64,000 nt of DNA, from positions 372,001 to 436,000 of IMG/VR virus record IMGVR_UViG_3300028558_000016, one strand, 5' to 3'. The first letter of the stretch is position 1. Each line of letters starts with the position of its first letter. Below are positions 15,316 to 41,745 of the stretch, one piece after another. The notes below the pieces were generated by a model. The model saw nothing but the letters and a program-made list of their open reading frames with translations. It was not told the DNA's origin and ran no database searches. The position numbers were made by a program, and so were the translations under genes.

Positions 15316-15430
15316 GGGGAAGTAGCTCAGTTGGCAGAGCAATAGAAAAAAGCGTATTCTGCCCAAGAATATTTACAGCAACACAAAAGTAAATCTGTGT
15401 GCGGCCGTTCGAATCGGTCCTTCCCCACCA
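15316..15430 (+). ncRNA. tRNA scaffold with a large insert replacing the anticodon loop
   Basis: GGGGAAG/CTTCCCC+ACCA, intact D and T arms; insert contains GTATTCTG...GAATATTTACAGCAA. Confidence 0.7.
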
Positions 15431-15431
15431 T

Positions 15432-15505
15432 GGGACATTCCATACTAATTGGTAAGTCACTCGGTTGTAACCCGAGAAATGGGGGTTCGAGTCCCTCATG
15501 TCCCA
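15432..15505 (+). tRNA. tRNA-Tyr(GTA), short variable loop
   Basis: CTCGG-TTGTAAC-CCGAG; GGGACAT/ATGTCCC; irregular D region. Confidence 0.75.
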
Positions 15506-15506
15506 C

Positions 15507-15590
15507 TGTACAGTATGCAAATTGGCGAAGCGAACAGATTTTGGATCTGTTGGAGTAATCCCGCTGCAGGTTCGAGCCCTGCCTGTATAA
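15507..15590 (+). tRNA. tRNA-Gln(TTG), long variable arm
   Basis: ACAGA-TTTTGGA-TCTGT; TGTACAG/CTGTATA. Confidence 0.78.
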
Positions 15591-15604
15591 CTAAAATTAA
15601 AAAC

Positions 15605-16669
15605 ATGGAACAATTTCCACATAACGAAGAAGTAGACTTTAATAAAAAGTTGAATGTAAAATTTGGAATAGATCCAACTGCAGATAGATTGCATTTGGGA
15701 CATTTGATACCTTTGCGATTTGCGAAGAAGATGTTAGACAATGGACATAACCTTGACATAGTGTTAGGAACGTTCACTGCGCAGCTTGGAGATCCTTCTG
15801 GAAAAGATTCAATGAGACCTATATTGGACTCTGAAACTACTAAAGACAATGCAATTGCATTATTGCCTATCATCAGAAGGATTTTAAAGAAAGATTTTAA
15901 TCTTCATTTCAATCATGAATGGTTCAAAAGAATGAATGCGATTGATATGATCAACATTCTTTCTAAGTTTACAGCAAATCAATTGTTGTCGAGAGACTCT
16001 TTTCAAAAAAGAATTTCAAATGAAGATGGAATTGGTATGCATGAATTAACTGTTCCTATTTTGCAAGGATTTGATTCTGTTCATTTGAAAACAGATCTCG
16101 AAATAGGAGGCAACGATCAATTGTTTAACTTTAAAATAACAAGAGATCTGCAAAGAGCATTTAATCAAAAGCCGGAGATTTGCATGTTGATGCCAATAAT
16201 CAATGGAACTGATGGGAGAAAAATGAGCAAGACGTTTAAGAATTGCATTTTTCTCGATGACAGTCCCGTAGATGTTTTTGGGAAAACGATGTCCATATCT
16301 GATGAGTTGATGAAAGAATGGTTCATGGTTTTTATGGATGAATCAATAGGTCATCCAATGGAAGCAAAGAAAAAACTCGCATTTCAAATAACAAAAGAAG
16401 TGTGGGACGAAGATAATGCTAAAATTGCATTGGAACATTTTGAAAGAGTAATACAAAAGAAGAATGTACCGGTAGAAATTAAGGACATTAAAGACACAGA
16501 TATTTTAAAAGTCATTATGGAATTACGTAAATGTTCTGCCACAGAAGCAAGAAGATTATTGTCGCAAGGAGCAGTTAAAGTCAATGATGAAAAAGCATTA
16601 GAAGAAAAGACCTTATCATCTGGAGACATTGTAAAGGTTGGTAAGCTGAACTTTGCTAAGATAATGTAA
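15605..16669 (+). CDS. tyrS: tyrosyl-tRNA synthetase
   Basis: GIDPTADRLHLGH, GGNDQLFN, KMSKT, C-terminal S4 domain. Confidence 0.95.
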   Translation: MEQFPHNEEVDFNKKLNVKFGIDPTADRLHLGHLIPLRFAKKMLDNGHNLDIVLGTFTAQLGDPSGKDSMRPILDSETTKDNAIALLPIIRRILKKDFNLHFNHEWFKRMNAIDMINILSKFTANQLLSRDSFQKRISNEDGIGMHELTVPILQGFDSVHLKTDLEIGGNDQLFNFKITRDLQRAFNQKPEICMLMPIINGTDGRKMSKTFKNCIFLDDSPVDVFGKTMSISDELMKEWFMVFMDESIGHPMEAKKKLAFQITKEVWDEDNAKIALEHFERVIQKKNVPVEIKDIKDTDILKVIMELRKCSATEARRLLSQGAVKVNDEKALEEKTLSSGDIVKVGKLNFAKIM

Positions 16670-16689
16670 AAAGAATTTTGTATATTTAC

Positions 16690-16762
16690 TGTCTCGTAGC
16701 GCAACTGGCAGAGCGCCTGATTCTGGATCAGGAGGTTGGAGGTTCGAGCCCTCCCGAGACAA
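16690..16762 (+). tRNA. tRNA-Gln(CTG)
   Basis: CCTGA-TTCTGGA-TCAGG; TGTCTCG/CGAGACA. Confidence 0.92.
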
Positions 16763-16781
16763 CAATTAAAACATAAATAAT

Positions 16782-18341
16782 ATGTCAAGAAAAGTAAGAG
16801 TAAGATTTGCCCCGTCACCGACAGGGCCACTTCACATGGGTGGCGTAAGAACCGCCTTGTATAATTATCTCTTTGCTAAAAAGCACGGAGGTGATTTCAT
16901 TTTAAGAATAGAAGATACAGACAAAGACAGATTTGTTCCTGGCGCAGAAGCTTACATCATTGAAGCTTTGAATTGGTGTGGAATAACTCCTAACGAAGGA
17001 ATAGATGGAAATTCTGTTCTTGATACATACAAGCAATCAAAAAGAAATGAGGCTGGAATATACAATCCTTATGTTGCAAAATTAATTGCAGAAGGAAATG
17101 CATATTACGCATTTGATACTAAAGAAGATCTTGACGCATTGAGAACTTCTGTTTCTGAAAAAAGAAAAGCAGGATTAAAAGTAAGAGAATTCGCTTATGG
17201 TGTTTTCACAAGAGAATTATTGAACAACAGCTTGAACATGACTGCCGATGAATTGAAAGCAAGATTGGATGCTGGAATTCCTTATGTCATTCGTTTGAAG
17301 ATGCCTAAGGAAGTTGAAATTAAATTCGTTGATTTGATCAGAGGTGCTGTCACTGTAAAAAGTCACACCATCGATGATAAGGTTATATTCAAGAGCGATG
17401 GACTTCCAACATACCATTTGGCAAATGTTGTTGACGATCACTTGATGGACATTTCTCACGTCATTAGAGGTGAGGAGTGGTTGCCATCGGCACCGTTGCA
17501 CGTCATGCTATACAAGATGTTAGGTTGGGAAGATACCATGCCTGAGTTTGCACACCTTCCTTTGATCATGGGACCAAGCGGTAAATTGAGCAAGAGAGAT
17601 GGAGATACATTGGGATTTCCTGTATATCCTTTAAAGTATACAGATCCAAAAACATCTGAGACATCGAGCGGTTACCGTGAGAATGGTTTCTTGCCAAGTG
17701 CATTCAATAACATGGTTGCATTTCTTGGTTGGAATCCAGGTGGCACCGATGAGGTATTCACAATGGATGAAATGATCGATAAATTCTCTTTGGATAGAGT
17801 AGGAAAATCAGGAGCTAAATTCGATTTGAAGAAGGCTAATTGGTTCAATCACCAACACATGATGAAGTCTGATAATGATGACTTGGCAAAATTATGGATC
17901 AGCAATGGAGGATTATACAATGGAGCCATGGGTGTTTGGTCTACTGATGCGACAAAACAACGTGTTGATTCATTTGAATATGTTTCAAAGGTTTGTGGAT
18001 TGCTTAAAGAGAAGGTTTCTAACATCAATGATTTTTGGAATTCTGGAAAATATTTCTTTATTGCGCCTGAGCCAAGTCTTGGAACAGAACATTCTTCGTT
18101 CTTGGCAGAAGTAATTGCAAACATAACTAAGGATGAAGTGTTCAATCACGATTCTTTAAGAGCTGTGTTTGATGCTTCAGTTAAGGCAACCGGTGTTGAC
18201 GCAAGAGAGGCTGGAATGGTTTTAAGGATTGCTGTAACAGGAATGAAAGTTGGTCCACCTTTATTTGATGCAATGGAATTGATAGGTAAAAATGAATCAA
18301 TAAACAGAATAGCATCTAACGTGGTAGTCAATCATGAGTAA
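16782..18341 (+). CDS. gltX: glutamyl-tRNA synthetase
   Basis: RFAPSPTGPLHMGG, RIEDTD, HVIRGEEW, KLSKR. Confidence 0.96.
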   Translation: MSRKVRVRFAPSPTGPLHMGGVRTALYNYLFAKKHGGDFILRIEDTDKDRFVPGAEAYIIEALNWCGITPNEGIDGNSVLDTYKQSKRNEAGIYNPYVAKLIAEGNAYYAFDTKEDLDALRTSVSEKRKAGLKVREFAYGVFTRELLNNSLNMTADELKARLDAGIPYVIRLKMPKEVEIKFVDLIRGAVTVKSHTIDDKVIFKSDGLPTYHLANVVDDHLMDISHVIRGEEWLPSAPLHVMLYKMLGWEDTMPEFAHLPLIMGPSGKLSKRDGDTLGFPVYPLKYTDPKTSETSSGYRENGFLPSAFNNMVAFLGWNPGGTDEVFTMDEMIDKFSLDRVGKSGAKFDLKKANWFNHQHMMKSDNDDLAKLWISNGGLYNGAMGVWSTDATKQRVDSFEYVSKVCGLLKEKVSNINDFWNSGKYFFIAPEPSLGTEHSSFLAEVIANITKDEVFNHDSLRAVFDASVKATGVDAREAGMVLRIAVTGMKVGPPLFDAMELIGKNESINRIASNVVVNHE

Positions 18342-19398
18342 TATGCCAATAGGAATCCAAGCAATGGGTCCAGCCGAAGTAATAACGGAAATGTTTCTTC
18401 GTCCTGGATCCATTTCTGCTTATAGAGAGCAGATGGATCTGCTTGATAAAAACAAGGAACATATTTCTGTTCACGATGGATTTTCTATAATAACTTTCTG
18501 GGAACCTGCAACGAAGGCTTTCAATGCCGGCTGGAAGATGAGAGTTGTTTATGGCGAAGTAAAAGAAAAGAAATATTTTGTAAAAGATAATTGGAAAAAC
18601 AAAACAGTTTATTCTGGTGCAAGGCCTGAATGCGAAAAATACGTTCAGGGAAATAACACATATCAATTAAATTATTCTCGTTTGACAATCGAAATTAATT
18701 CAACTCTCGATGATAAGTTGGATGAATTAAAAAAGATTATTTCTGACTCAACAAAGCCAGATGAGAACGAATTGCGTTTTGCAAAGGCTACATCTAATTG
18801 GATCAAGGGTCCTGTCATGGGTTGGTTGAATGATAACAAGCTTGATTTCACCACTCGTTCTAAACCATCTCATCATAAATCATTAGTCACTGGAAATCTT
18901 TTCGACTATGAAAAATATTCTGCCATTGATGAAGAGAAGTGGTGGCCTAAAGATTCTCCTGATGCAAAACTTTATTTGCCTCTTCCTAAAGACGAATATC
19001 CTTACACAGTCGTGTATTCTGAAGAGGAGAGTAATTTTCCAATAAAATCTGAACATTTAAAAGAATTAATAAGCTTGGTTGAATTTACAGATCTTATTAG
19101 TTTCTCTACTGCTTCCAAAACTGTTTTTCCTGAGATGATCAAAAATCCAGATGAAAAACCTTGGGATATAATTCAAAGATTAAATTTGATGCAAAGCAAT
19201 GATGATGATGCCATCAAACAAATGGCCAAAGATGCTTTAGCAAAATATCCCGACAAGGTTGAAGAATATAGGAAAGGAAAGAAGGGAGTTCTCAGCCTGT
19301 TCATGGGCGAAGTAATGAAAGCCGGTAAAGGAAAAGTAAATCCGCAAATGGCTTCAGAAATAGTAAAAAATCTTTTGGAAGAAAAGGAGGGAGCATAA
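18334..19398 (+). CDS. protein with C-terminal GatB/YqeY domain
   Basis: VEEYRKGKKGVLSLFMGEVMKAGKGKVNP. Confidence 0.8.
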   Translation: MSNMPIGIQAMGPAEVITEMFLRPGSISAYREQMDLLDKNKEHISVHDGFSIITFWEPATKAFNAGWKMRVVYGEVKEKKYFVKDNWKNKTVYSGARPECEKYVQGNNTYQLNYSRLTIEINSTLDDKLDELKKIISDSTKPDENELRFAKATSNWIKGPVMGWLNDNKLDFTTRSKPSHHKSLVTGNLFDYEKYSAIDEEKWWPKDSPDAKLYLPLPKDEYPYTVVYSEEESNFPIKSEHLKELISLVEFTDLISFSTASKTVFPEMIKNPDEKPWDIIQRLNLMQSNDDDAIKQMAKDALAKYPDKVEEYRKGKKGVLSLFMGEVMKAGKGKVNPQMASEIVKNLLEEKEGA

Positions 19399-19413
19399 CT
19401 GCTCCCACTTTCT
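19386..19413. terminator. hairpin between convergent genes
   Basis: GGGAGCA-TAAC-TGCTCCC followed by T-rich tail. Confidence 0.5.
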
Positions 19414-19601
19414 TATTTAACTGTAGATGTTGCAACAACTGTAGGAGTTGCAATCACTGAAGCAGCTTCAACTGCTTTACAAGTATCAACACACGCTTTC
19501 GTTGTGTCACAAACTTCATTAACAACTTCAACTTCCGTTTTAGGAGTTCCACATGCAGCAAACATCGTCGTTGCAATAATTAAAAGTACAATCTTTTTCA
19601 T
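19413..19601 (-). CDS. small lipoprotein
   Basis: MKKIVLLIIATTMFAAC lipobox. Confidence 0.7.
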   Translation of the reverse strand: MKKIVLLIIATTMFAACGTPKTEVEVVNEVCDTTKACVDTCKAVEAASVIATPTVVATSTVK

Positions 19602-19716
19602 AGATTTTGTTGGGTTTTTAGTTTAGTTCCATATTAAACCGGGTCACGGTCAGGCTATATATAAATCACTGAGAAGTTAGTTTCAATCGATATATACAGC
19701 ACCACAATCATTTCCA

Positions 19717-19914
19717 TTGAAGCCAAAATTTAAAATCGGACAAACCATTTATTACATGTATCTCAATTGGATATGCAAATCTAAAGTGAAAAATCATTAT
19801 GAAAAAGATGGGAAGATCTTTTATTCTGATGACAGAAATGATGAAATATTAGAAAAATTCGTATTTGATAATAAGCCCGAACTGATTGATTTTCATATAA
19901 ATAGAACAAAATAA
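19717..19914 (+). CDS. hypothetical protein
   Basis: ORF track (KFKIGQ start). Confidence 0.55.
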   Translation: MKPKFKIGQTIYYMYLNWICKSKVKNHYEKDGKIFYSDDRNDEILEKFVFDNKPELIDFHINRTK

Positions 19915-19919
19915 ATAAA

Positions 19920-19960
19920 TAATTTTTCTGGTTTAAAAATAAGTGCCTATATTTGTATTC
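19920..19960 (+). promoter_or_regulatory. conserved operon promoter block
   Basis: TTTTTCTGGTTTAAAAATAAGTGCCTATATTTG. Confidence 0.6.
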
Positions 19961-19978
19961 AAGTTGAAAATCTTTAAG

Positions 19979-20032
19979 GGTTGCATTCAGCATAACAAAT
20001 CATCTACAAAATGAAACCAAAAGCAATCTGAA
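19979..20032 (+). ncRNA. CAGCA-motif structured element, copy A
   Basis: GGTTGC-ATTCAGCATAACAAA...GCAATC-TGAA. Confidence 0.55.
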
Positions 20033-20087
20033 GAATTTCAATGAAACAAAAAAGAAAAAAGATATATAACATAAGATATTAAAAAAA

Positions 20088-20142
20088 GGATGCGTTCAGC
20101 ATAACAAACTTACAATTGAAAAGTAAACCAAGGCATCCTGAA
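20088..20142 (+). ncRNA. CAGCA-motif structured element, copy B
   Basis: GGATGC-GTTCAGCATAACAAA...GCATCC-TGAA. Confidence 0.55.
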
Positions 20143-20155
20143 AAATTTTAAAGAA

Positions 20156-20248
20156 ATGAAAAAAGTAAATAACATAATCCCGCAGTTTCAGTTTGTGGTG
20201 CCGTTTAGCGGTTCCAACGGGCGTGTTATGTACTTTGACGATTTGTAA
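20156..20248 (+). CDS. attenuator leader peptide, Pro/Phe/Val-rich (30 aa)
   Basis: MKKVNNIIPQFQFVVPFSGSNGRVMYFDDL*. Confidence 0.8.
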   Translation: MKKVNNIIPQFQFVVPFSGSNGRVMYFDDL

Positions 20249-20298
20249 AAGAAAACGTTAGACAACAGAAAGCCCGGTGGAAACATCGGGCTTTTTTT
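20218..20298 (+). terminator. attenuator: antiterminator and intrinsic terminator
   Basis: CGGGC(20218-22) can pair GCCCG in the 5' arm of AAAGCCCGGTG-GAAA-CATCGGGCTTT-TTTT. Confidence 0.8.
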
Positions 20299-20311
20299 AT
20301 TTGCAAAATTT

Positions 20312-20384
20312 CGGGGTGTAGCGCAGTTGGTAGCGCGCGTGGTTTGGGGCCATGAGGTCGTCGGTTCGAGCCCGGCTACCCCGA
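20312..20384 (+). tRNA. tRNA-Pro(TGG)
   Basis: CGTGG-TTTGGGG-CCATG; CGGGGTG/TACCCCG. Confidence 0.9.
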
Positions 20385-20511
20385 CAGAAAAAGTCCTGTG
20401 ATTGACAAGAGTGTGTAAACCTTACAGGAAACGCACGGCTCCGCAGAGGAGTTAGAACTGGAATTGAGGGATACCAGATTGTTGATCGAATGGAAAATTG
20501 TTCTTTGAAAT

Positions 20512-20585
20512 GTGGGAGTAGCTGAGTTGGTTCAAGCGCCAGACTGAAAATCTGGAGTAGATCGGTTCGAGACCGATGTCTCACA
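20512..20585 (+). tRNA. tRNA-Phe(GAA)
   Basis: CCAGA-CTGAAAA-TCTGG. Confidence 0.88.
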
Positions 20586-20633
20586 CGAGTTTTGTTTTTC
20601 CAAGGTTTTGTTTTTCACAAATCAAAACCACCA

Positions 20634-20706
20634 CGAGGTGTGGCGAAGTTGGTATCGCGCCTGGTTTGGGACCAGGAGATCGCAGGTTCGAGCCCTGTCA
20701 CCTCGA
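20634..20706 (+). tRNA. tRNA-Pro(TGG)
   Basis: CCTGG-TTTGGGA-CCAGG; CGAGGTG/CACCTCG. Confidence 0.92.
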
Positions 20707-20717
20707 CAAATGGAAAT

Positions 20718-20790
20718 GTGGATGTAGCTCAGTTGGTAGAGCACTGCCCTGAAGAGGCAGGTGTCGGGGGTTCGAATCCCTCCATCCACA
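20718..20790 (+). tRNA. tRNA-Phe(GAA)
   Basis: CTGCC-CTGAAGA-GGCAG; GTGGATG/CATCCAC. Confidence 0.92.
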
Positions 20791-20796
20791 CGGCGC

Positions 20797-21030
20797 TGTC
20801 CCATGAGGGACTTTTCGTTGAGTATCTGCGGTTGAAATACCGATACAGTCAGACGTGACTTCAAGATGAAACTAAACAGAAAAATGGAAACACTACGGTA
20901 AAAGTCCGGGAGGCAGCGGCAGAATTAAATAGGAAACACCAACAACAGACTAAAAGTTGTTTTGTACGAAGCCCGCTTAAGAAGCGTCGTAGCAATGTCA
21001 AGGTGAGTTACAAAAGAGTCCGTGGGGACA
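20797..21030 (+). ncRNA. candidate structured ncRNA (about 235 nt)
   Basis: ends pair: TGTCCCATG-AGGGACTTTT / AAGAGTCC-GTGGGGACA; internal hairpins; no credible ORF. Confidence 0.5.
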
Positions 21031-21055
21031 CAAAAAACTTTTCCTATTTTAAAAT

Positions 21056-21130
21056 TGACGCATAGCTCAGTTGGTTCAGAGCATCTGCCTTACAAGCAGA
21101 GGGTCGGGGGTTCGAATCCCTCTGCGTCAA
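21056..21130 (+). tRNA. tRNA-Val(TAC)
   Basis: TCTGC-CTTACAA-GCAGA. Confidence 0.92.
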
Positions 21131-21131
21131 C

Positions 21132-21449: not shown

Positions 21450-21454
21450 AACAT

Positions 21455-21530: not shown

Positions 21531-21531
21531 C

Positions 21532-21789
21532 ATGAAAGATGAAAGTAAAATAACAACTCAGCAATTCAAATTTATTTCTGAATTGCTTTGGGGTGGAGTT
21601 CCCGTTGACCGGGTACAAGCTGAAGAGTCTGCGATGTTCAAAGCGAACGCGCCAAAAATATTAGAGGAATATCCTCTATTGGATAAATCATTTTTTGAAA
21701 AACATAGTAAAAACAAAGGTTATGAAATTGTCAAAAGTAAAAATATACAAGATGAACAAGGTAGGCAAGGAGAAATTGTCGACGGCTGA
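21532..21789 (+). CDS. hypothetical protein
   Basis: ORF track. Confidence 0.5.
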   Translation: MKDESKITTQQFKFISELLWGGVPVDRVQAEESAMFKANAPKILEEYPLLDKSFFEKHSKNKGYEIVKSKNIQDEQGRQGEIVDG

Positions 21790-22852
21790 TTTATTGGAAA
21801 GAACCGGCTACATAAAACAAGTCTCATCTGGATTGTTCGTTCAGATGCACTTTATGAAGTTGGTGATGAATAACATCGAAAAGATCGTTAGAGAAGAACT
21901 AAACAAAATAAGCGCCTTGGAAATTGGATTGAACCAGTTACAAGGCGCTGAAGTTTGGAAGCAAACCGGTCGCTATAATGATTATGGCGCTGAGATGTTC
22001 AAGCTCAAGGATCGTTCAGATAAGGAGATGGTGTTCACAGGAACAAACGAAGAACTCGTGACTGTTGTTGCAAGAGAATATGTGGAGTCATATAGAGATT
22101 TGTCTTTCACATTCTATCAGATAAACAATAAGTTCAGAGATGAAATTCGCTGTAACACAGGTCTGATTAGATGTAAAGAGTTTCTCATGATGGATGCATA
22201 TTCATTTCATGTTAACAAAGAAGATCTCGAAATTAGATATAATGAAATAAGAAATTGTTATATTGCCATATTCGATCGACTCAAACTGAAATACAGAATT
22301 GAAACTGCAGATTCAGGAGAGATTGGCGGATCTGTTTCAGAGGAATTCATAGTTGAAACAAGTGATGGAGATATTGAGATAGGACACATTTTCCAATTAG
22401 ACACAAAATACTCGTCCAAGCTTGAAGCACAATTCATAGATGAAAAAGGCGAAAAGCAGGACATAGTGATGGGATGTTATGGAATAGGAATTTCTCGATT
22501 GGCCCAGGTTCTTGCAGACATTAACAGAGATGGAAATAATCTCAATTGGTCAAGAGAACTTGCAGCATACAGTCATGCAATCATTGTGGCAGATGTGAGG
22601 AACGAAGAACAAATGAGGATTGCTGAAAAGATATACGATGAATTGAAAAGAAAAAAGAAGAACGTATATCTCGATGACAGAAATCTTCGTGTTGGCGAAA
22701 AGCTTACCGAAGCTGACATCCTTGGTTCTGCGAATAAAATTTTAATAGGTAAAAATATAAGTGAAAATAATTTTGAGGTGAAGAAAAATTCAAACGATGC
22801 ATGGGAAAAAATGTCCATGGAAAGCTTGGATTACTTCTTGGAACTTCAGTAA
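21722..22852 (+). CDS. proS: prolyl-tRNA synthetase lacking the INS editing domain
   Basis: WKQTGRY, TNEE, KFRDEIR, EFLMMDAYSF, EIGHIFQL, MGCYGIGISR, anticodon-binding domain. Confidence 0.93.
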   Translation: MKLSKVKIYKMNKVGKEKLSTADLLERTGYIKQVSSGLFVQMHFMKLVMNNIEKIVREELNKISALEIGLNQLQGAEVWKQTGRYNDYGAEMFKLKDRSDKEMVFTGTNEELVTVVAREYVESYRDLSFTFYQINNKFRDEIRCNTGLIRCKEFLMMDAYSFHVNKEDLEIRYNEIRNCYIAIFDRLKLKYRIETADSGEIGGSVSEEFIVETSDGDIEIGHIFQLDTKYSSKLEAQFIDEKGEKQDIVMGCYGIGISRLAQVLADINRDGNNLNWSRELAAYSHAIIVADVRNEEQMRIAEKIYDELKRKKKNVYLDDRNLRVGEKLTEADILGSANKILIGKNISENNFEVKKNSNDAWEKMSMESLDYFLELQ

Positions 22853-22864
22853 AAAGTAGAAATA

Positions 22865-32416: not shown

Positions 32417-32434
32417 AAACAAAAACAACATAAA

Positions 32435-34663: not shown

Positions 34664-34666
34664 CTT

Positions 34667-36208: not shown

Positions 36209-36209
36209 T

Positions 36210-37193
36210 ATGATTTTAGAAATTGCAATAGGAGATGCGTACGGACGTCCATTTGAATTCAACACACCAGAATTCATAGCCAAACACAATGATGTTCTTG
36301 GTTATAAGCATCGTATTGGTGAAGAAGAAAATGGAATAGGAATTTATACAGATGACACTCAAATGTCTATTGGCGTTGCAGAACAAATGGGTTCAGACCT
36401 TCCTGGTACTCAAGTAAGATTTGCTGCACACTTTGTCACCTCTTATAAGAGAGACCCAAGAAAAGGATATAGCAAAAGAATAACGAAAGCTCTCGAGGAA
36501 TCAAAACCAAATCTTCCATTTGAATTTATATTGAAAGCTAAACAGGCAGGAATGTCGAGCAACGGAAGCGTAATGCGTTCTGTTCCTCTTGGCATGATGT
36601 CTGATCCAAAGGAAATAATGCACAGGAGCATTGTTCAAACATCAACATCACATGGACACATTGATGCCGTTAATTCTGCGGTTGTTGTTGCATTGACCGC
36701 ACATTTCTTTTATCACTTATATCCTCGATTGGAAGATTACATTCAATCGGATAAATTGATAATGTATAAGGAATGGATGAATGGACAAGTTGGTTCAGCT
36801 GTGTTTAACGATGTATATGACTCTTACATCTTTAAAAGGAAAAACGATAAGTTGCAATGTGATTCAAAAACAACTGCTTCATTGTCTATCAAATTAGCAT
36901 GGGGAGTTAAGATTAGTGGTGGAAATTTAAAGACATCCGCTAAACAAATATTAAAGAGAGCTGTTGATATTGGAGGAGACGTTGATTCGTCAGCATCGAT
37001 TGCAATGGGATTGTACAGCTTAAGGACTGATGCAATAATGGATCTCCCTGATGTGTTATATGAAAATCTCGAGAATGGACCTTTTGGTAGAGACTTCTTG
37101 GTTGACATGGATGTTCAAATGCAAAAGAAATTTCCAAGAAATGTAAGGGAAGAGAAAGCTGAGTCTGAAAAATTAACCGACATAATAATATAA
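36210..37193 (+). CDS. ADP-ribosylglycohydrolase (DraG/ARH family)
   Basis: AIGDAYG, YTDDTQM, NGSVMR, GGDVDS. Confidence 0.9.
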   Translation: MILEIAIGDAYGRPFEFNTPEFIAKHNDVLGYKHRIGEEENGIGIYTDDTQMSIGVAEQMGSDLPGTQVRFAAHFVTSYKRDPRKGYSKRITKALEESKPNLPFEFILKAKQAGMSSNGSVMRSVPLGMMSDPKEIMHRSIVQTSTSHGHIDAVNSAVVVALTAHFFYHLYPRLEDYIQSDKLIMYKEWMNGQVGSAVFNDVYDSYIFKRKNDKLQCDSKTTASLSIKLAWGVKISGGNLKTSAKQILKRAVDIGGDVDSSASIAMGLYSLRTDAIMDLPDVLYENLENGPFGRDFLVDMDVQMQKKFPRNVREEKAESEKLTDIII

Positions 37194-37196
37194 CAC

Positions 37197-37412
37197 ATGG
37201 GAAAAGAAAAAATAATATACGTTGGTCAATTAAAAAAGAAAGACGTATCAGTAGAAGATGGAGGTCAGGCAATGGTATCAGATCCTTTCAGCACTAACGG
37301 CGATAATGGAATGTTTGTGAGAATCCAATCTTGGGACGAAAATAAAAAGCATGAGGATTTTAAAAAATTCCAAGGAAGAAAAATAAAAGTTACTATTGAA
37401 ACTGTGGACTAA
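37197..37412 (+). CDS. hypothetical protein
   Basis: ORF track. Confidence 0.55.
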   Translation: MGKEKIIYVGQLKKKDVSVEDGGQAMVSDPFSTNGDNGMFVRIQSWDENKKHEDFKKFQGRKIKVTIETVD

Positions 37413-38080
37413 TGAAATATAAATTACGTGAAATAAAAGATGGAATATTCCTTGCCGAGTTCGATAATCATTACGACTTGGCAATGACCTTTTTAAGGTA
37501 TCAGGAATTTTATGAATCTGCTAATCCCAAATTCAAGGGAAGAAGATTCATCATACTTGATTACATGGAATGGTACAGCAAAAATCATAAAGGATTATTC
37601 ACATATCCTGCGGATTGGGCAGGGTTTAATATTCCAATGAGCGTGGTATTTGAAGTTCAATCCTCTTATCCTGGAATGGGACCTATAAAAGACTTCAACA
37701 AGTATGATGAGTTGATGAAGCAGATCGTTCTCAAGATAGAAAAGAAGAAGGAAAGAAAAAGCAACGGTTACCGTTCTATGGGAAAGAAATACATCATAGG
37801 AGCTTTGGAAGGAAAAAAATCAGTTATGAAGCACGAAATAGCTCATGGCTTGTATCATGTGTATCCTTATTATAAGATTGACATGGATAAGCTTTATTCA
37901 AAACTATCCAAGGAGAGCAAGAAGAAATTGGAAGTTGAATTTGAGTCAATGGGTTATCATAAATCAGTTTGGAAGGACGAAGCTCAGGCATATCTTTCAA
38001 CTGGAGATTATTTGACACCTGAAGAAAGAAAACCGTTTCAGGATTTATTAAAGAAGTTTTTAAAGGATGTCAAGCTCTGA
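37412..38080 (+). CDS. HExxH-motif protein
   Basis: HEIAH...DEAQAY. Confidence 0.6.
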   Translation: MKYKLREIKDGIFLAEFDNHYDLAMTFLRYQEFYESANPKFKGRRFIILDYMEWYSKNHKGLFTYPADWAGFNIPMSVVFEVQSSYPGMGPIKDFNKYDELMKQIVLKIEKKKERKSNGYRSMGKKYIIGALEGKKSVMKHEIAHGLYHVYPYYKIDMDKLYSKLSKESKKKLEVEFESMGYHKSVWKDEAQAYLSTGDYLTPEERKPFQDLLKKFLKDVKL

Positions 38081-38756
38081 AAAATATAATTTTTTTCCAT
38101 TTAATATACGTGACAAGAAGTATAAGAAAGTCACTTATAAAAATAGGTGCGTTCTTGTTCCGCTTGAAGGAAATAAAGATTATCTCAGACATTTATGTGG
38201 TTATGCAGTGTTTAAGAAAACTGACATTCCAAAAGATTGGTGGGGAAATTATAACGCACCTGGATTGCAAGAATTAAATGTGCATGGTGGAATAACATAT
38301 TGCAGACAATTTAAAGTTCCAAACCAAGCTAAGATAGAAAAGAAATTTCATGATCAAATTGATGCGTTATATGACATCTCAAACAGAGAAACTTATGACC
38401 ATGAAAAAGTTTCTAAAAGGATGAAAGAAGTGAAGAGGCTGGAAAAAGAATGCAACGATGAATTGTCAAAGAGCGATGAAGGATATATTGTGTTTGGTTT
38501 TGACTGTGGACATTATAGGGATGCAGAGAATCCAAATCTAAAAGATCCTAACCATGTAATGATATTGACCGAGCAGATGGATACGCTGCTCAAAAAATTT
38601 AAGGAAAGTTACGAGGATTATAGAGATGCGGATGGAGTGACAAAACATGTAGTTAGAAAATCCATCATGGCAAACGTAAACAGAGAAGCAGAAATTCAAT
38701 GTGAGTTAGGTTTTGGCGGACTTATTAATTTGCTTTCAGGAGAAACAGAAGATTAA
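38067..38756 (+). CDS. hypothetical phage protein
   Basis: CGY...VHGGITY...GFDCGH motifs. Confidence 0.65.
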   Translation: MSSSEKYNFFPFNIRDKKYKKVTYKNRCVLVPLEGNKDYLRHLCGYAVFKKTDIPKDWWGNYNAPGLQELNVHGGITYCRQFKVPNQAKIEKKFHDQIDALYDISNRETYDHEKVSKRMKEVKRLEKECNDELSKSDEGYIVFGFDCGHYRDAENPNLKDPNHVMILTEQMDTLLKKFKESYEDYRDADGVTKHVVRKSIMANVNREAEIQCELGFGGLINLLSGETED

Positions 38757-38773
38757 CAAATAAAATAAATAAC

Positions 38774-40069
38774 ATGAAAAAAACAGTAATCATTATTGGA
38801 GGTGGAACAGTATCTCACGTCAGATCACATCTCGCCTTAGCTGCAGTTGCGTATGGAACTACAGCAAGACATTTAAAAGCAATTTGCGAAAGCCATTCGG
38901 ATAAATTGGACGTCAAATTACATCTAACCAAAATGGCCGAAGGTTGGGCAACAAAGGATGGAATGGAAACAGCCGAAGATGTTGCAGCCTTAGTTCAAAA
39001 ATTAAAAGCTGATGTGAATGTGAAGATCATATTCTTTAATCCCGCCTTGGTGGATTTTTCTGGAGAAGTTACCGGACATGCTGCTTATAATACTAATGAC
39101 TCTTTCACTAAAATTGAAAGCGGAAAGTATTCTAAACGTTTAAACAGCAGAACTGGAAAAACAAGCATTGAGTTGTCTCCAAAAGAAAAGATCATAAAAG
39201 AAATACGCAACGGAAGAAAAGACATCTTCCTTGTTGGGTTTAAAACAACATGTGGTGCAACACAAGATGAACAATACATAGCAGGATTAAATCTTTTGAA
39301 AGAATCGAGTTGCAATCTTGTTCTTGCCAATGATACCAAAACGAGATTGAACATGATCATAACTCCAGAAGAAGCGAGATACCATGTAACAAAAAACAGG
39401 GATGAAGTTTTGGAGATGCTTGTTGAAATGGCATACTTAAGAAGCCATTTGTCTTTCACTCATAGCACAGTGATTGCCGGTGAAGCTATTCCATGGAAAT
39501 CAGAATTAGTTCCAGACTCATTAAGAAAAGCAGTTGATTATTGCATTGAGAAAGGTGCATACAAAGAATTCAGAGGTTCTACTGTTGGTCACTTTGCTTG
39601 CAAGATAGATGAGAAAACCTTCTTGACGTCTAAACGTAAAACAAACTTCAATGACCTTGAGAAGAATGGTCTTGTTAAAGTTGTCGTTAATGGCAAGGAC
39701 ACTGTTATTGCGTATGGAGCAAAACCTTCCGTTGGTGGACAATCACAGAGAATAATATTCTCTGAACATAATGATTATGATTGCATCGTACATTTCCATT
39801 GTCCTAAAAAAATAAATTCACCAGTTCCTTCTGTATCACAAAGAGAATATGAATGTGGAAGCCATGAGTGTGGCAAAAACACTTCTAATGGTTTGAAACG
39901 CTTTGGTAATCTTTCTGCTGTTATGTTAGACAATCACGGGCCAAACATTGTATTCAATCATACTATTGATCCGCAGGAAGTAATTGATTTCATTGAAGCC
40001 AATTTTGACCTTGCTGGAAAAACCGGTGGTCCAGTTAAACTTGAACAAACATTACAAACTTCGTTATGA
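38774..40069 (+). CDS. CoaB-like domain fused to class II aldolase/adducin-like domain
   Basis: GGGT, LVGFKTT, LVLAND; KPS, IVHFH, NHG. Confidence 0.7.
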   Translation: MKKTVIIIGGGTVSHVRSHLALAAVAYGTTARHLKAICESHSDKLDVKLHLTKMAEGWATKDGMETAEDVAALVQKLKADVNVKIIFFNPALVDFSGEVTGHAAYNTNDSFTKIESGKYSKRLNSRTGKTSIELSPKEKIIKEIRNGRKDIFLVGFKTTCGATQDEQYIAGLNLLKESSCNLVLANDTKTRLNMIITPEEARYHVTKNRDEVLEMLVEMAYLRSHLSFTHSTVIAGEAIPWKSELVPDSLRKAVDYCIEKGAYKEFRGSTVGHFACKIDEKTFLTSKRKTNFNDLEKNGLVKVVVNGKDTVIAYGAKPSVGGQSQRIIFSEHNDYDCIVHFHCPKKINSPVPSVSQREYECGSHECGKNTSNGLKRFGNLSAVMLDNHGPNIVFNHTIDPQEVIDFIEANFDLAGKTGGPVKLEQTLQTSL

Positions 40070-40284
40070 AAAAAATAATAACATGCATCCTACTTGGAGC
40101 CGCATTGTTTTCAAGCTGTGGTCCATCTGCTGAAGAATTAGCAGTAGGCAGAAAGAAAAAACAAGACAGCTTGACATTAGAAATTCTTAAAGTACAATTA
40201 CGTACTCTTGATTTGATTGGAAATCTAAACAAGAAAGTTGATGCAGTAGACAAGGATCTACAGGATCATTGTAAAAATAAATGA
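40066..40284 (+). CDS. small lipoprotein
   Basis: LFSSC lipobox. Confidence 0.65.
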   Translation: MKKIITCILLGAALFSSCGPSAEELAVGRKKKQDSLTLEILKVQLRTLDLIGNLNKKVDAVDKDLQDHCKNK

Positions 40285-40889
40285 CTCTCGAAGAAGCCAT
40301 AAAATCTGCAGACTCTCGTTCGAGGAACATGAACCTTCATTGGTTTGTGTGTGAGTGGAATGATGGTTACATCATCCATTCTTCCTCGCACATGATAAGA
40401 TTTCCTGACACAAAGTATGTGTGGAGTACAGGAGAACTTCAATCGTGGAAGGTGATTTACGATGAGGAAGAAAGAAAATTTAAACATGTTGTAAAGAAAT
40501 TAAAAATGGAAAAAGAAGAAGCTTTAGAAATAGCAAAACAATTCATCGACGGAGAAAAATTGTTCATGCAAATGTCAAACGCAGTTCCTGCTATAATAAC
40601 CCACAGAGGAAAGCAATTGCTTGGATCTGTTTCAAGCATAATTCCAGCGGATCCTGAGATTGTGTTATGCGCACATACCAGCTTTCCAGTTGGACAGGAG
40701 ATCATAGATGCCGTAAAAGAAATATCTCCAGACAGATTGTTGTTATCGATAGACGATGAACTCGATTTGGCGCCTCGTCAGGATGTTATGAGATTGGTTG
40801 GAACTAATCTAACGAAGATGACTCCGTCCCAAACTAAAGTGGCGCAAGAGGAATTAAAAGGAAAAGACATCATTGAGATCAATGGCTGA
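40281..40889 (+). CDS. hypothetical protein
   Basis: ORF track. Confidence 0.55.
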   Translation: MTLEEAIKSADSRSRNMNLHWFVCEWNDGYIIHSSSHMIRFPDTKYVWSTGELQSWKVIYDEEERKFKHVVKKLKMEKEEALEIAKQFIDGEKLFMQMSNAVPAIITHRGKQLLGSVSSIIPADPEIVLCAHTSFPVGQEIIDAVKEISPDRLLLSIDDELDLAPRQDVMRLVGTNLTKMTPSQTKVAQEELKGKDIIEING

Positions 40890-41121
40890 TTATTACTGTG
40901 ATAATAAAAGACATCTTGTTTGCATTCCATATTCAGTGGAGAATTTACATGAGATGGCAAAGGATCTTGAAATAAAAAAATGTTGGTATTCAATCAAGCC
41001 TTGGCCGCATTACGATATTCCATTAAGACGAATTGATGAGATACAAAGTAAATGCAATGTTGTTAATTTCAGAGACATAGTCAACATTAAAAGAGGCACT
41101 TTTAAAAATGAGAATAAATGA
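40882..41121 (+). CDS. DUF4031-like small protein
   Basis: HL...LHEMA..L...W...PHYDI. Confidence 0.6.
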   Translation: MADYYCDNKRHLVCIPYSVENLHEMAKDLEIKKCWYSIKPWPHYDIPLRRIDEIQSKCNVVNFRDIVNIKRGTFKNENK

Positions 41122-41542
41122 AGGTGACATATTAGTATGCAAGCCTGGATATTGGGGACATGAAGATAATCCAGCAAAATCAGATAATGTAAGACCAAAA
41201 GAAAATCCAACTTATGGTGGAGCAGGGTACATAGATGGATTAATGCAAAAAGCATCATCAAGCTATAATGGTGAAGATCCATTTGATCTTCACGTTTTTT
41301 GGAAATTTCACAATGAAGCTGGAGTATTTTCAAGAGCTGTAAGACTTGCAAACGAAGAAGAAAAGAAAGCGTATAAAGAAGGAATAAGAAATGCTAAAGA
41401 TATTCAACGAACAACTTTCAAAATATCATACGTTTCCATTGATGGTGAAAACAAGAATGTTGAAGTAGAAGCTTTTTATGAAACTGCCGCAGTAAGCTCC
41501 ATAAAAGATTTAAAACGAGTCAATTATGTCATTTCTGGTTAA
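41108..41542 (+). CDS. hypothetical protein with shared C-terminal F.I.Y module
   Basis: FKISYVSIDGENKNVEVEA...IKDLKRVNY. Confidence 0.6.
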   Translation: MRINEGDILVCKPGYWGHEDNPAKSDNVRPKENPTYGGAGYIDGLMQKASSSYNGEDPFDLHVFWKFHNEAGVFSRAVRLANEEEKKAYKEGIRNAKDIQRTTFKISYVSIDGENKNVEVEAFYETAAVSSIKDLKRVNYVISG

Positions 41543-41551
41543 TAGAGAAAA

Positions 41552-41631
41552 TAAATTTTTTAGTTTCAGAAATAGTTCCTATATTTGCAGATATAAACAT
41601 TGAAACAATTTTAAAAAGAAAAGGTATATAG
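41552..41631 (+). promoter_or_regulatory. conserved operon promoter block
   Basis: TTTTTTAGTTTCAGAAATAGTTCCTATATTTG...GAAACAA...GGTATATAG. Confidence 0.65.
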
Positions 41632-41638
41632 TTTAGAA

Positions 41639-41745
41639 GATTGCTTACAGCAAAACAAAATGGTTAAAGAATCACCGAAAGGTGGTTTTTTCGGTTCGAT
41701 CCCGAAGCTCTGAGATTACATCAATGAGTTTTAAGGCAATCTGAA
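41639..41745 (+). ncRNA. CAGCA-motif element enclosing a tRNA-like core, copy C
   Basis: GATTGC-TTACAGCAAAACAAA...TGGTTAAAG...GGTTCGATCCC...GCAATC-TGAA. Confidence 0.55.

What the first reader, a model, noticed from the sequence alone, without database searches (positions are those of the whole stretch)
15316..41745. Recurrent covarying CAGCA RNA motif, including a circularly permuted copy inside a tRNA
Elements at 19979, 20088 and 41639 share stem5'-N(1-3)-T(T/A)CAGCA-A-rich...stem3'-TGAA with covarying stems (GGTTGC/GCAATC, GGATGC/GCATCC, GATTGC/GCAATC) and a possible second CAG/CTG pairing. They lie between promoter and leader peptide. Copy B encloses a TTGAAAA (Phe-anticodon-like) loop and copy C encloses D- and T-loop-like sequences. 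In the tRNA at 15316 the same parts occur in permuted order (GTATTC-TG..GAATAT-TTACAGCAA) in place of the anticodon loop. Permutation is typical of compact autonomous folds such as small ribozymes or protein-binding modules (inference).
Basis: partly seen in the sequence, partly recalled or inferred. Interest (0 to 1): 0.72.

Follow-up and report, generated by a model that had tools for sequence, protein, structure and literature searches.

The report
Multicopy RNA docking hairpin in megaphage
A 482-kb bacteriophage carries at least seven copies of a small RNA hairpin with a fixed single-stranded motif, placed in front of its tRNA operons, once alone and once inside a tRNA; it looks strikingly like the "Class I" RNAs of social amoebae and is most likely a docking site for an RNA-binding protein, not a ribozyme.

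Summary
The window belongs to a 482-kb tailed phage, probably of Bacteroidota. The element is a 7-bp helix (P1) joining its two ends. An invariant single-stranded motif (N-U-N-CAGCA-W-W-ACAAA) follows the 5' strand, and the interior is free: empty, hairpins, or a whole tRNA-like domain.

There are seven copies in the genome: A, B, C and the tRNA-embedded copy T in the window, and E1, E2 and F6 outside it. P1 covaries. A and B are conserved in four phage lineages. T is a true circular permutation, also found in four lineages with compensatory changes.

Most copies sit 16-24 nt upstream of mini-ORFs that act as leader-peptide attenuators of tRNA operons. No Rfam family reaches threshold. The only family that hits is Dictyostelium Class I RNA (up to 25.7 bits; cut-off 41.5), which shares the architecture, the motif and the AAG...CUG termini. 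Class I RNA binds an RRM protein, and this phage encodes an 84-aa RRM protein.

Best reading, inferred and not shown: an RNA-binding-protein docking module that modulates leader translation or stability. Ribozyme activity is unsupported. No RNA data exist.

The parts
19978..20032 (+). Module copy A. P1 5' strand 19978-19984, motif 19985-19999, free loop, P1 3' strand 20023-20029, tail GAAG.
   Evidence: Coordinates, fold, model R1 56.6 bits. Orthologs are present in 3 other lineages.
20087..20142 (+). Module copy B. P1 at 20087-20093 and 20133-20139, motif 20094-20108. The loop holds the conserved ATTGAAAAGTAAA. The 3' end lies 16 nt before the leader ATG.
   Evidence: R1 64.1 bits. Nearly invariant in 4 lineages.
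41638..41745 (+). Module copy C. P1 at 41638-41644 and 41736-41742, motif 41645-41659. The 91-nt payload has a GNRA-capped hairpin and a T-arm-like hairpin. The copy is absent from the syntenic relative G002.
   Evidence: R1 62.4 bits. Indel against G002 shown.
41633..41755 (+). TAGAA direct repeats (41633-41637 and 41751-41755) that bracket copy C and about 8 nt of flank. These are the boundaries of the indel relative to G002.
15316..15430 (+). T, a tRNA-shaped RNA whose anticodon loop is replaced by a circularly permuted module. Insertion 15347-15393, capped P1 hairpin 15354-15372, motif 15373-15387 followed by AAAAGTAAA.
   Evidence: Rfam tRNA 46 bits with a 47-nt insert. Permuted match to E2. 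Orthologs in L272 and L274/L275 with compensatory changes in the acceptor stem, T stem and P1. A divergent ortholog in L273.
20156..20248 (+). Leader mini-ORF MKKVNNIIPQFQFVVPFSGSNGRVMYFDDL*, upstream of the tRNA Pro/Phe/Pro/Phe/Val/Val genes.
   Evidence: The peptide is conserved in relatives. Alternative pairings shown.
20269..20298 (+). Intrinsic terminator of the Pro/Phe/Val leader. Its 5' strand can instead pair with a segment inside the mini-ORF (antiterminator).
41767..41850 (+). Leader mini-ORF MKNRNHIHKHQIWHRDMSGLGVTCTLK*, upstream of tRNA-Trp, His, His.
41873..41906 (+). Intrinsic terminator of the His/Trp leader.
19946..19963 (+). Bacteroidota-type promoter element (CCTATATTTG) upstream of copy A. 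The same promoter block stands at 41578-41593 upstream of C and before every large tRNA cluster.
   Evidence: The consensus TAnnTTTG is from my own knowledge of Bacteroides promoters.
41622..41631 (+). ARRTATATAR box, 6 nt before copy C (another at 20060-20069, 17 nt before copy B). It is a phage promoter-like or start-site element.
   Evidence: About 28 copies in the genome, mostly intergenic and 5-40 nt before gene starts.

Best explanation
The element is a phage-specific, multicopy structured RNA module.

Shown:
- A 7-bp helix (P1) pairs the start (AAG...) and the end (...CUG-A/U) of the element.
- An invariant unpaired motif, N-U-N-C-A-G-C-A-W-W-A-C-A-A-A, follows the 5' strand directly.
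- Everything between the motif and the 3' strand is a free payload: nothing, small hairpins, or a tRNA-like domain.
- The outer end of P1 can be open or capped.
- The module occurs in three settings. (i) At or near the 5' end of the leader transcripts of tRNA operons, 16-24 nt before the AUG of a leader peptide whose codons mirror the downstream tRNAs. (ii) As an apparently stand-alone small RNA, F6. (iii) Grafted into a tRNA body, T.

Inferred:
- P1 plus the motif is a docking site for an RNA-binding protein. The best candidate is the phage's own 84-aa single-RRM protein, or the host's RbpB-type RRM proteins.
- A protein bound at the 5' edge of the ribosome-loading region would set how well the leader peptide is translated, or how long the leader RNA lives. 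That would give the self-contained attenuators a second input on tRNA output.
- The free copies (T on its tRNA scaffold, F6) would act as stable decoys or sponges, or as carriers for the same protein.
For: Structure and constraint:
- P1 is predicted in every copy.
- P1 covaries: 3 of 6 pairs have double changes, 96.7% of cells pair against 33-46% when slid, and 0 of 500 shuffles reach the score.
- Five G.U wobbles would be C.A mismatches on the other strand.
- In four lineages at roughly 73-78% nucleotide identity, P1 and the motif are kept while the spacers and the rest of the loop drift.

Modularity:
- Payloads range from 38 to 130 nt and include tRNA-like domains scoring 51 and 43 bits.
- The permuted copy T keeps P1 through an A-U to G-C change. 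Its cap loop is 5 nt in two lineages and 28 nt in another. Its 22-nt motif strand is identical in three lineages. A fourth lineage has a different helix at the same place.

Context: the module sits 16-24 nt before the leader AUGs. The attenuator has its own terminator/antiterminator alternatives.

Resemblance to Class I RNA:
- The only Rfam family hitting the modules is RF01414, over the full model and in register with P1. E2 scores 25.7 bits, A 20.6 and A' 19.9. With that family alone on this genome, E=0.003.
- The published definition of Class I RNA fits feature by feature: a 6-bp end-joining stem with compensatory changes, an adjacent unpaired 11-nt motif, a variable remainder, start AAG and end CUGU. 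That RNA is bound directly by the RRM protein Rnp1A (PMC7919456).

A candidate partner:
- The phage encodes an RRM_1 protein (88.8 bits) behind a Bacteroidota-type promoter.
- It is conserved at 80-96% identity in related metagenomic contigs. A 93%-identical homolog occurs in the same samples as the module-bearing relatives.
- Its cellular relatives are Bacteroidales RNA-binding proteins.
- In Bacteroides, the single-RRM protein RbpB binds single-stranded AU-rich RNA, a multicopy family of sRNAs and 5' UTRs, and mRNAs of translation-related genes (PMC11697453).
Against: - No experiment or RNA data set bears on binding. No RNA run holds the phage, and the complex predictor does not fold protein-RNA pairs.
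- The link to an RRM protein rests on analogy only.
- The Class I match is far below the family cut-off (25.7 against 41.5 bits). Corrected for 4227 families it is not significant on its own.
- The linker between stem and CAGCA is one nucleotide shorter than in Class I RNA. The dictyostelid-invariant U3 is variable here, while U4 is invariant.
- No module lies near the RRM gene.
- Copy C is missing at the same operon in relative G002, so the module is dispensable for attenuation.
- Several operons have no module at all.
Confidence: 0.4

Rival explanations
1. 5' stabiliser or processing hairpin. P1 at the extreme 5' end protects the leader RNA from 5'-end-dependent decay, or marks a cut site for a cellular or phage RNase. 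The motif would be the nuclease's recognition or cleavage sequence.
For: Copies C and F6 start 6-7 nt after an ARRTATATAR promoter-like box, and E1 starts 5 nt after a tRNA 3' end. P1 would therefore lie at the 5' end of the primary or processed RNA. The tRNA-like payloads of E1 and E1' would attract RNase P and RNase Z.
Against: A mere stabiliser does not need an invariant 12-nt single strand. In T the module is internal to a tRNA and P1 is capped, so no 5' end is involved. The transcription start sites are inferred, not mapped.
Confidence: 0.15
2. Base-pairing seed. The unpaired motif is an antisense seed, as in bacterial sRNAs. It would pair with a target RNA of the phage or the host, and P1 would only present it.
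For: The motif is single-stranded and invariant. F6 looks like a stand-alone sRNA with its own terminator. RRM-associated multicopy sRNAs with 5' seeds exist in Bacteroides (PMC11697453).
Against: No complementary site stands out in the phage genome. The exact complements are the modules themselves, and one-mismatch hits number 85 against 49 for the reversed control, without any pattern. The host is unknown, so host targets could not be tested.
Confidence: 0.1
3. Selfish miniature insertion element acting at the DNA level. P1 would be a 7-bp terminal inverted repeat and the payload its cargo. It would insert into tolerant 5' UTRs and have no RNA function.
For: Copy C is an indel between two syntenic phages and is bracketed by TAGAA direct repeats. 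The payloads are heterogeneous and include tRNA fragments. There are tandem copies (A+B, E1+E2).
Against: Orthologous copies A and B keep P1 and the one-sided motif under purifying selection in four lineages while the flanks drift. The G.U wobbles work on the sense strand only. The repeat is only 7 bp, and symmetry does not extend beyond it. The permuted, capped version in T is conserved with compensatory changes. I did not look for a transposase.
Confidence: 0.08
4. Small self-cleaving ribozyme. Circular permutation would then be the usual sign of a compact catalytic fold.
For: Permuted topologies occur (T against E-type copies). E1 lies 5 nt after a tRNA, like the theta ribozymes of gut phages (PMC10879173).
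Against: Copies A, A' and B' have only one helix and an unstructured loop. No second helix or pseudoknot covaries. No ribozyme family appears even at E<=10. The HDV-like nested double pseudoknot cannot be drawn, because P1's 3' strand is the last element of the module.
Confidence: 0.06

Closest known systems
Class I RNAs of dictyostelid social amoebae (Rfam RF01414; Kjellin et al. 2021, PMC7919456)
   Same: [quoted passage not shown]
- A conserved unpaired motif lies directly after the 5' strand. The Rfam consensus is CUUACAGCAA, and phage copy C reads UUACAGCAA.
- The rest is variable in sequence and structure.
- The element starts AAG and ends CUG(U).
- The short copies are 52-53 nt long with 32-36% GC.
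- Many paralogs occur per genome.
- An RRM protein is the known partner there, and an RRM gene is present here.
   Different: - Scores of 19.9-25.7 bits are far below the 41.5-bit cut-off.
- The linker is one nucleotide shorter.
- The payloads can be large, including tRNA-like domains.
- Most copies are parts of 5' UTRs, not separate genes.
- There is no DUSE promoter.
- The carrier is a bacteriophage, while the class was reported as unique to Dictyostelia.
- Common descent, transfer or convergence cannot be told apart here.
RbpB (single-RRM protein) with the multicopy FopS sRNAs and 5' UTR ligands in Bacteroides thetaiotaomicron (PMC11697453)
   Same: The likely host phylum is the same. A small single-RRM protein (about 65% identical relatives of the phage protein are Bacteroidales RNA-binding proteins) pairs with a family of paralogous RNA elements. 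It binds single-stranded A/U-rich RNA near ribosome-loading sites, and its ligands are enriched for translation-related genes.
   Different: FopS RNAs have a single-stranded 5' stretch plus a terminator hairpin, not an end-joining stem with an adjacent motif. No Rfam family other than tRNA and RF01414 hit the modules. Binding of any RRM protein to the phage module is untested.
HDV-like theta ribozymes next to phage tRNAs (PMC10879173)
   Same: Both are structured RNAs attached to tRNA genes of recoded phages. E1 begins 5 nt after a tRNA.
   Different: The theta ribozymes are nested double pseudoknots with a catalytic C in J4/2. The module has one helix and no pseudoknot.
Bacterial Y-RNA-like YrlA with Ro60/Rsr
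   Same: E1 and E1' have a terminal stem that encloses a tRNA-like domain with an abnormal or missing anticodon arm.
   Different: The phage has no TROVE/Ro60 gene. The YrlA model does not hit the modules. Most copies have no tRNA-like part.
Engineered tRNA scaffolds for expressing structured RNAs (own knowledge, not checked here)
   Same: T replaces the anticodon arm of an otherwise intact tRNA with a foreign RNA module. In the laboratory this design gives correct processing and high stability.
   Different: T is natural and conserved. Its processing and stability have not been measured.

Membership tests
Dictyostelium Class I RNA (RF01414) | Rfam gathering score of 41.5 bits | tested here: not met
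   Best hits are E2 25.7, A 20.6 and A' 19.9 bits (L035 21.6, L097 21.0). All span the full model 1-56. With this family alone on this genome, E=0.003.
Dictyostelium Class I RNA (RF01414) | [quoted passage not shown] | tested here: met
   P1 is 7 bp (6 bp plus an A-U or G.U pair). 96.7% of cells pair and 3 of 6 pairs have double changes.
Dictyostelium Class I RNA (RF01414) | Conserved, unpaired 11-nt motif (CCUUACAGCAA) next to the 5' stem strand; U3, C6, C9, A10 and A11 near-universal | tested here: inconclusive
   Copies C and T read UUACAGCAA (B' reads UUACAGCAU). C6, A7, G8, C9 and A10 are invariant and position 11 is A or U. However, the linker is 1 nt shorter, U4 rather than U3 is invariant, and position 3 varies.
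Dictyostelium Class I RNA (RF01414) | Conserved termini: start AAG, end CUGU | tested here: met
   AAG stands at the start of P1 in A, B, C, E1, E2 and F6, and CUG is invariant after P1. The next base is U in E2, F6, L254-A and L256-A/B, and A elsewhere.
Dictyostelium Class I RNA (RF01414) | Independent 42-65-nt transcripts behind a DUSE promoter | tested here: not met
   A and B are 52-53 nt from stem to stem but lie inside 5' UTRs. Other copies are 80-155 nt. The upstream elements are a Bacteroidota-type promoter and an ARRTATATAR box, with no DUSE. Whether they are transcribed as such cannot be tested, because there is no RNA data.
Dictyostelium Class I RNA (RF01414) | Direct binding by an RRM protein (Rnp1A/CIBP) | not testable with these tools
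   The phage encodes a single-RRM protein.
HDV-like / theta ribozymes | Nested double pseudoknot (P1, P1.1, P2, P3, P4) with a catalytic C in J4/2 and cleavage at the 5' end of P1 | tested here: not met
   No HDV-like family appears at E<=10. Only one helix is conserved, and P1's partner strand is the 3' end of the element. Self-cleavage itself was not tested.
YrlA / Y RNA with Ro60 | Ro60 (TROVE) partner gene and a match to the YrlA model | tested here: not met
   No TROVE domain in the genome. The weak YrlA hits lie on tandem tRNAs, not on the modules.
tRNA (for element T) | Cloverleaf with acceptor, D and T arms and a 7-nt anticodon loop | tested here: inconclusive
   The Rfam tRNA model gives 46 bits. 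The acceptor, D, anticodon and T stems pair at 98.8% with compensatory changes. The anticodon loop, however, is replaced by 47 nt with no canonical anticodon.
Protein-spliced (archaeal/eukaryal type) tRNA introns | Bulge-helix-bulge motif plus an EndA-type splicing endonuclease and a ligase | tested here: not met
   The phage has no tRNA_int_endo and no RtcB; only a T4 Rnl1-type ligase is present. No bulge-helix-bulge can be drawn around the T insertion by inspection.

The most novel reading that the evidence does not exclude
A bacteriophage carries a true functional counterpart of the dictyostelid Class I RNA-RRM protein particle, whether by descent, by transfer or by strict convergence. The same 'end-joining stem plus UUACAGCAA' platform would be read by a small RRM protein. 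The phage would use it to gate leader-peptide attenuators of its own tRNA operons, with a natural tRNA-scaffolded copy (T) and a free sRNA (F6) as titrating decoys. That would give the still unexplained Class I RNAs a tractable bacterial model. It would also reveal a protein-controlled layer on top of ribosome-sensed tRNA supply.
Probability: 0.15. Interest if true: 0.9.

Novelty: new variant of a known kind. Interest (0 to 1): 0.7.

Why it matters
1. The module is undescribed in Rfam. A stringent two-part pattern for its short form found it in none of 185,579 prokaryotic species genomes. It is nevertheless conserved and multicopy in a clade of megaphages.
2. Its near-identity in design to amoebal Class I RNAs is unexpected. 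Their mechanism is still unknown after twenty years, and they were thought unique to Dictyostelia. The pairing can be tested directly with an 84-aa RRM protein.
3. It shows a natural circular permutation and a natural tRNA scaffold for presenting an RNA module.
4. It sits on what appear to be leader-peptide attenuators that tune transcription of phage tRNA genes to the supply of those same tRNAs. I found no description of that regulatory logic.

Tried and rejected
- Rfam at gathering thresholds found only tRNAs.
- My first descriptor scan extended stems greedily and missed the true copies. This was fixed.
- GluRS-anchored viral loci are too distant and hold no copies.
- The viral pattern scans returned mostly chance hits plus the coding sequence of a small basic protein (MMKKKAAKKSMLTAKQKTLPKALQ...). 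Only L111, L202 (G002) and L035/L097 survived.
- The leader-peptide pattern in viral and metagenome collections found only G002, one near-identical contig, and the phage itself.
- RNA runs: none holds the phage. DNA runs show identical sequence with no variants, which rules out an assembly artefact but adds no covariation.
- Splicing enzymes: no EndA and no RtcB. Ro60: none.
- Antisense partner of the motif: none.
- Cellular genomes: 11 pattern hits, none with a stem.
- The NCLDV capsid, tail sheath and Terminase_6C searches were blank. The phage nature was settled instead by the Peptidase_S77 and PHROG hits.
- Complex prediction on the RRM protein plus copy B was not folded (no verdict for protein-RNA jobs) and counts neither way.
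- Model hits in L018, L274:1021 and L276:9775 lie in coding sequence and are false.
- My statement that the L035 element lies inside an ORF used wrong minus-strand coordinates. One search shows that only its 3' strand overlaps the last ~13 codons of an ORF. The status of L035/L097 stays open; with 67 pattern hits I estimated roughly 0.3-0.8 such matches by chance.
- The CAG/CUG second helix and a UUCA/UGAA inner helix were rejected, because the variable linker base does not covary.


Full report
WHAT THE WINDOW IS. The window is bases 372001-436000 of a 482,156-bp virus record. The record has 55 tRNA genes, three of them with CUA suppressor anticodons. It is a tailed phage: it has a T4-type prohead core protease (Peptidase_S77), strong PHROG matches and collagen-like tail fibres, and no NCLDV capsid. 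The promoters read TTTG...TAnnTTTG, which from my own knowledge is the Bacteroides consensus. Its RRM protein is closest to Bacteroidales proteins. A Bacteroidota host is therefore likely. Four independent rhizosphere DNA metagenomes carry the identical sequence over 15303-15544 and 19828-20900, so the features are not assembly artefacts.

THE OBSERVATION. All four reported elements are there. The stem is 7 bp, not 6: the base before it pairs with the T of "TGAA", so the real tail is G-A/U. A descriptor of stem, 1-3 nt, CAGCA, matching stem and TGAA isolates A, B, C and a minus-strand copy, E1. A second minus-strand copy, E2, follows E1. A covariance model built from the copies finds a further one, F6, at genome 307143-307225. 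With the tRNA-embedded copy T, that makes seven copies in this genome, plus a decayed look-alike in the Asn/Gln/Tyr leader.

THE HELIX. In my table, 77 of 77 stem cells pair. The third pair is G-C, G.U or A-U. The fourth is A-U, U-A or G-C. The sixth is G-C or A-U. Five G.U wobbles would be C.A mismatches on the other strand. On alignment A2, 96.7% of cells pair against 33-46% for slid partners, 3 of 6 pairs change on both sides, and 0 of 500 shuffles reach the covariation score. Two rows of that alignment (L035, L097) are of doubtful status. Without them the G-C type at the fourth pair is lost, but the other double changes remain.

THE MOTIF AND THE PAYLOAD. Directly after the 5' strand comes N-U-N-CAGCA-W-W-ACAAA, with U, CAGCA and ACAAA essentially invariant. 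What follows is free:
- about 23 unstructured nucleotides in A;
- a small hairpin with ATTGAAAAG in B;
- a GNRA hairpin plus a T-arm-like hairpin in C;
- a hairpin in E2, and a UUCG-capped hairpin in F6;
- a whole tRNA-like domain in E1 (Rfam tRNA 51 bits, with 35 nt inserted after the GAA anticodon) and in its ortholog E1' in contig L111 (43 bits, with the anticodon arm reduced to a mini-hairpin).

The proposed second CAG/CUG helix has no support. Both triplets are invariant, and the C and U of CUG already pair in P1.

RELATIVES. The module is rare. Two exhaustive pattern scans of IMG/VR gave only L111, G002 and the doubtful L035/L097. A stringent two-part pattern found nothing with a stem in 185,579 prokaryotic genomes. 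Anchoring on neighbouring genes recovered more relatives. G002 is syntenic over about 35 kb at roughly 73-78% identity, and two further lineages are L254/L255 and L256-L261/L275. In all four lineages, A and B are present at the same place. P1, the motif and the CUG are conserved, while the A-B spacer and the rest of the loops drift. That is purifying selection on the core at orthologous sites. By contrast, copy C is missing from G002 at the same operon, and the indel is bracketed by TAGAA direct repeats. The module can therefore be gained or lost, and the operon does not need it.

THE PERMUTED COPY. The tRNA at 15316-15430 scores 46 bits as a tRNA, with 47 nt in place of the anticodon loop. 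The insertion reads: A-rich strand, P1 3' strand, 5-nt cap, P1 5' strand, motif. It matches E2's 3' part at 14/15 and its 5' part at 18/21 in swapped order. Only 5 of 137,746 genome windows come within 4 points of that score. Topologically it is the same two-helix junction, with the outer end of P1 capped and the inner end opened into the anticodon stem.

Orthologs exist in L272 and L274/L275:
- The hairpin changes from GTATTCT/AGAATAT to GCATTCT/AGAATGT, an A-U to G-C double change.
- In L272 the cap loop is 28 nt and carries the canonical outer flanks (CU-GAAAG ... AAAA-AG).
- The 22-nt motif strand is identical in all three.
- The acceptor and T stems carry their own compensatory changes. 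Overall 98.8% of cells pair against 40-55% when slid, and four pairs change on both sides.

A fourth lineage (L273) has, at the same position, a tRNA-shaped RNA with a differently sequenced hairpin followed by GUUCUGCAAAACAA. T is thus a conserved, folded RNA that displays the module on a tRNA body.

CONTEXT. Every large tRNA cluster has the same layout. There is a shared promoter block, an ARRTATATAR box, a mini-ORF whose residues mirror the downstream tRNAs, and an intrinsic terminator:
- PQFQFVVPF before tRNA Pro/Phe/Val;
- NHIHKHQIWH before Trp/His;
- LSLSLSLSLS before Leu/Ser;
- NNNNQQQYQQNNY before Asn/Gln/Tyr;
- ITRIIRIRRR before Ile/Arg;
- TADCADE before Asp/Cys/Glu/Ala;
- TTGTTTTTKTGKGK before Met/Thr/Lys/Gly;
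- MKTKMKYKR before Lys.

In the Pro/Phe/Val leader, the terminator's 5' strand can pair instead with a segment inside the mini-ORF. That is the classic attenuator logic, applied here to tRNA genes. The attenuators are self-contained. The modules occur in only some of them, between the box and the AUG, and end 16-24 nt before it. The box recurs about 28 times, mostly intergenic and just upstream of gene starts. It probably marks transcript starts, which would put P1 of C and F6 at the very 5' end. This is inferred.

WHAT IT RESEMBLES. No Rfam family reaches its threshold. At E<=10 the only non-tRNA family that hits the modules is RF01414, Dictyostelium Class I RNA. The hits cover the full model in register with P1: E2 25.7 bits, A 20.6 and A' 19.9. 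With that family alone on the whole genome, E2 is the top hit at E=0.003. The Rfam consensus GaUcuC-CUUACAGCAAUuaAAacAau...GagAuC-UG compares with copy C, GAUUGC-UUACAGCAAAACAAAA...GCAAUC-UG.

The published definition matches feature by feature (PMC7919456):
- 42-65 nt long;
- a 6-bp stem joining the ends, maintained by compensatory changes;
- an unpaired 11-nt motif next to the 5' strand;
- a remainder variable in sequence and structure;
- start AAG and end CUGU;
- many paralogs.

The differences are a linker one nucleotide shorter, U4 rather than U3 invariant, large payloads, a location inside 5' UTRs, no DUSE promoter, and a bacteriophage as carrier. The score is far below the cut-off, and corrected for 4227 families it is not significant alone. 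I therefore file the module as a look-alike, not a member.

THE CANDIDATE PARTNER. Class I RNA is bound directly by the RRM protein Rnp1A (PMC7919456). This phage encodes an 84-aa single-RRM protein (RRM_1, 88.8 bits; RNP2 IFVSNL, RNP1 KGFGFVEM) behind a Bacteroidota-type promoter. It has 80-96% identical homologs on related metagenomic contigs. A 93%-identical one occurs in the very samples that hold the module-bearing relatives. It is about 65% identical to Bacteroidales RNA-binding proteins. In Bacteroides the single-RRM protein RbpB binds single-stranded AU-rich RNA, a multicopy sRNA family and 5' UTRs, and mRNAs of translation functions (PMC11697453). This makes "RRM docking site" a concrete hypothesis, but nothing here shows binding.

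MECHANISM AND RIVALS. The best-supported reading (0.4) is a protein-docking module at the 5' edge of the ribosome-loading region of the leader RNAs. It would modulate leader translation or stability and thereby attenuation, with T and F6 as free copies of the same site. The rivals are:
- a 5' stabiliser or RNase site (0.15);
- an antisense seed (0.10; no partner found in the phage);
- a selfish insertion element (0.08; argued against by orthologous conservation, the strand-specific wobbles and T);
- a self-cleaving ribozyme (0.06; one helix only, no matching family, no covarying tertiary pairing).

About 0.2 remains for something not considered.

VERDICT. The ribozyme interpretation is not supported, and the protein-binding alternative is favoured. 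The module is undescribed, phage-specific as far as I could search, and unexpectedly similar to an amoebal ncRNA class.

Noticed in passing
window 20156-20248, 41767-41850, 14187-14276, 45198-45281; genome 123527, 320449, 8933(-), 7635(-): Eight mini-ORFs precede the tRNA clusters. Their residues and codons mirror the downstream tRNA genes, for example LSLSLSLSLS before Leu/Ser tRNAs and ITRIIRIRRR before Ile/Arg. Each is followed by an intrinsic terminator. They look like leader-peptide attenuators that tune tRNA transcription to the supply of those same tRNAs. One literature search found no description of this.
   Followed up: partly
window 45828-45973; genome 7775-7880 (-): Some tRNA genes carry short insertions right after the anticodon: tRNA-Ile(GAU) has 74 nt and a tRNA-Phe-like gene has 35 nt. 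These are far too small for group I introns, and the phage has no EndA or RtcB, only a T4 Rnl1-type ligase (genome 1651-2337, minus strand). Whether they are spliced is unknown.
   Followed up: partly
window 14605-14692, 15507-15591, 41915-41998, 42375-42464; genome 7373-7464 (-): Several tRNAs for Asn, Gln, Trp, His and Lys are 84-92 nt long. The extra nucleotides lie in the variable region where I inspected (Gln, Lys), which is normally seen only in Leu, Ser and Tyr tRNAs.
   Followed up: no
window 2278-2351; genome 358020-358092 (-), 368276-368349: There are three suppressor tRNAs with a CUA anticodon. TAG ends only 20 of 367 ORFs longer than 150 aa. TAG may be recoded in part of the genome.
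   Followed up: no
window 15605-16669, 16782-18341, 21695-22852: The translation island holds phage-encoded TyrRS, GluRS/GlnRS-like and ProRS-like genes. Each sits next to the tRNA cluster for related amino acids. TyrRS homologs occur on megaphage-sized contigs of up to 709 kb.
   Followed up: partly
genome 357701-357952 (+) (L252:1495-1746): An 84-aa single-RRM protein is encoded by the phage next to a suppressor tRNA gene. It is conserved at 80-96% identity in related metagenomic contigs.
   Followed up: partly
window 20060-20069, 41622-41631 and about 26 other sites in the genome: An ARRTATATAR box recurs in intergenic regions. It often follows terminators and lies 5-40 nt before start codons. 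It is probably a phage-specific promoter or start-site element, used alongside host-type promoters.
   Followed up: partly
window about 14092-14150 (genome 386092-386150): The Asn/Gln/Tyr leader has an insert in the same position as copy C, after ...TATATAGAATAGAA. It reads AGATTG-TGACGCTAC...AATCT-GAAAAAG, which looks like a decayed module. Model R1 does not detect it.
   Followed up: no
L035:7555-7646, L097:1366-1453: Two AT-rich (22-23% GC), giant-virus-like contigs share no genes with the phage. They carry GGGUGC-UUACAGCAAUACAAAA...GCA(C/U)CC-UGAU, which scores 21-21.6 bits on the Class I model. This may be a chance match or a genuine Class I-like gene outside Dictyostelia.
   Followed up: partly
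L277 and L278 (538-kb and 709-kb megaphage contigs): More distant megaphages carry RtcB, Rnl2-type RNA ligases, PTH2, IF3, an L12-like protein and several aaRS genes around their TyrRS gene. They have no module within 10 kb of it.
   Followed up: no
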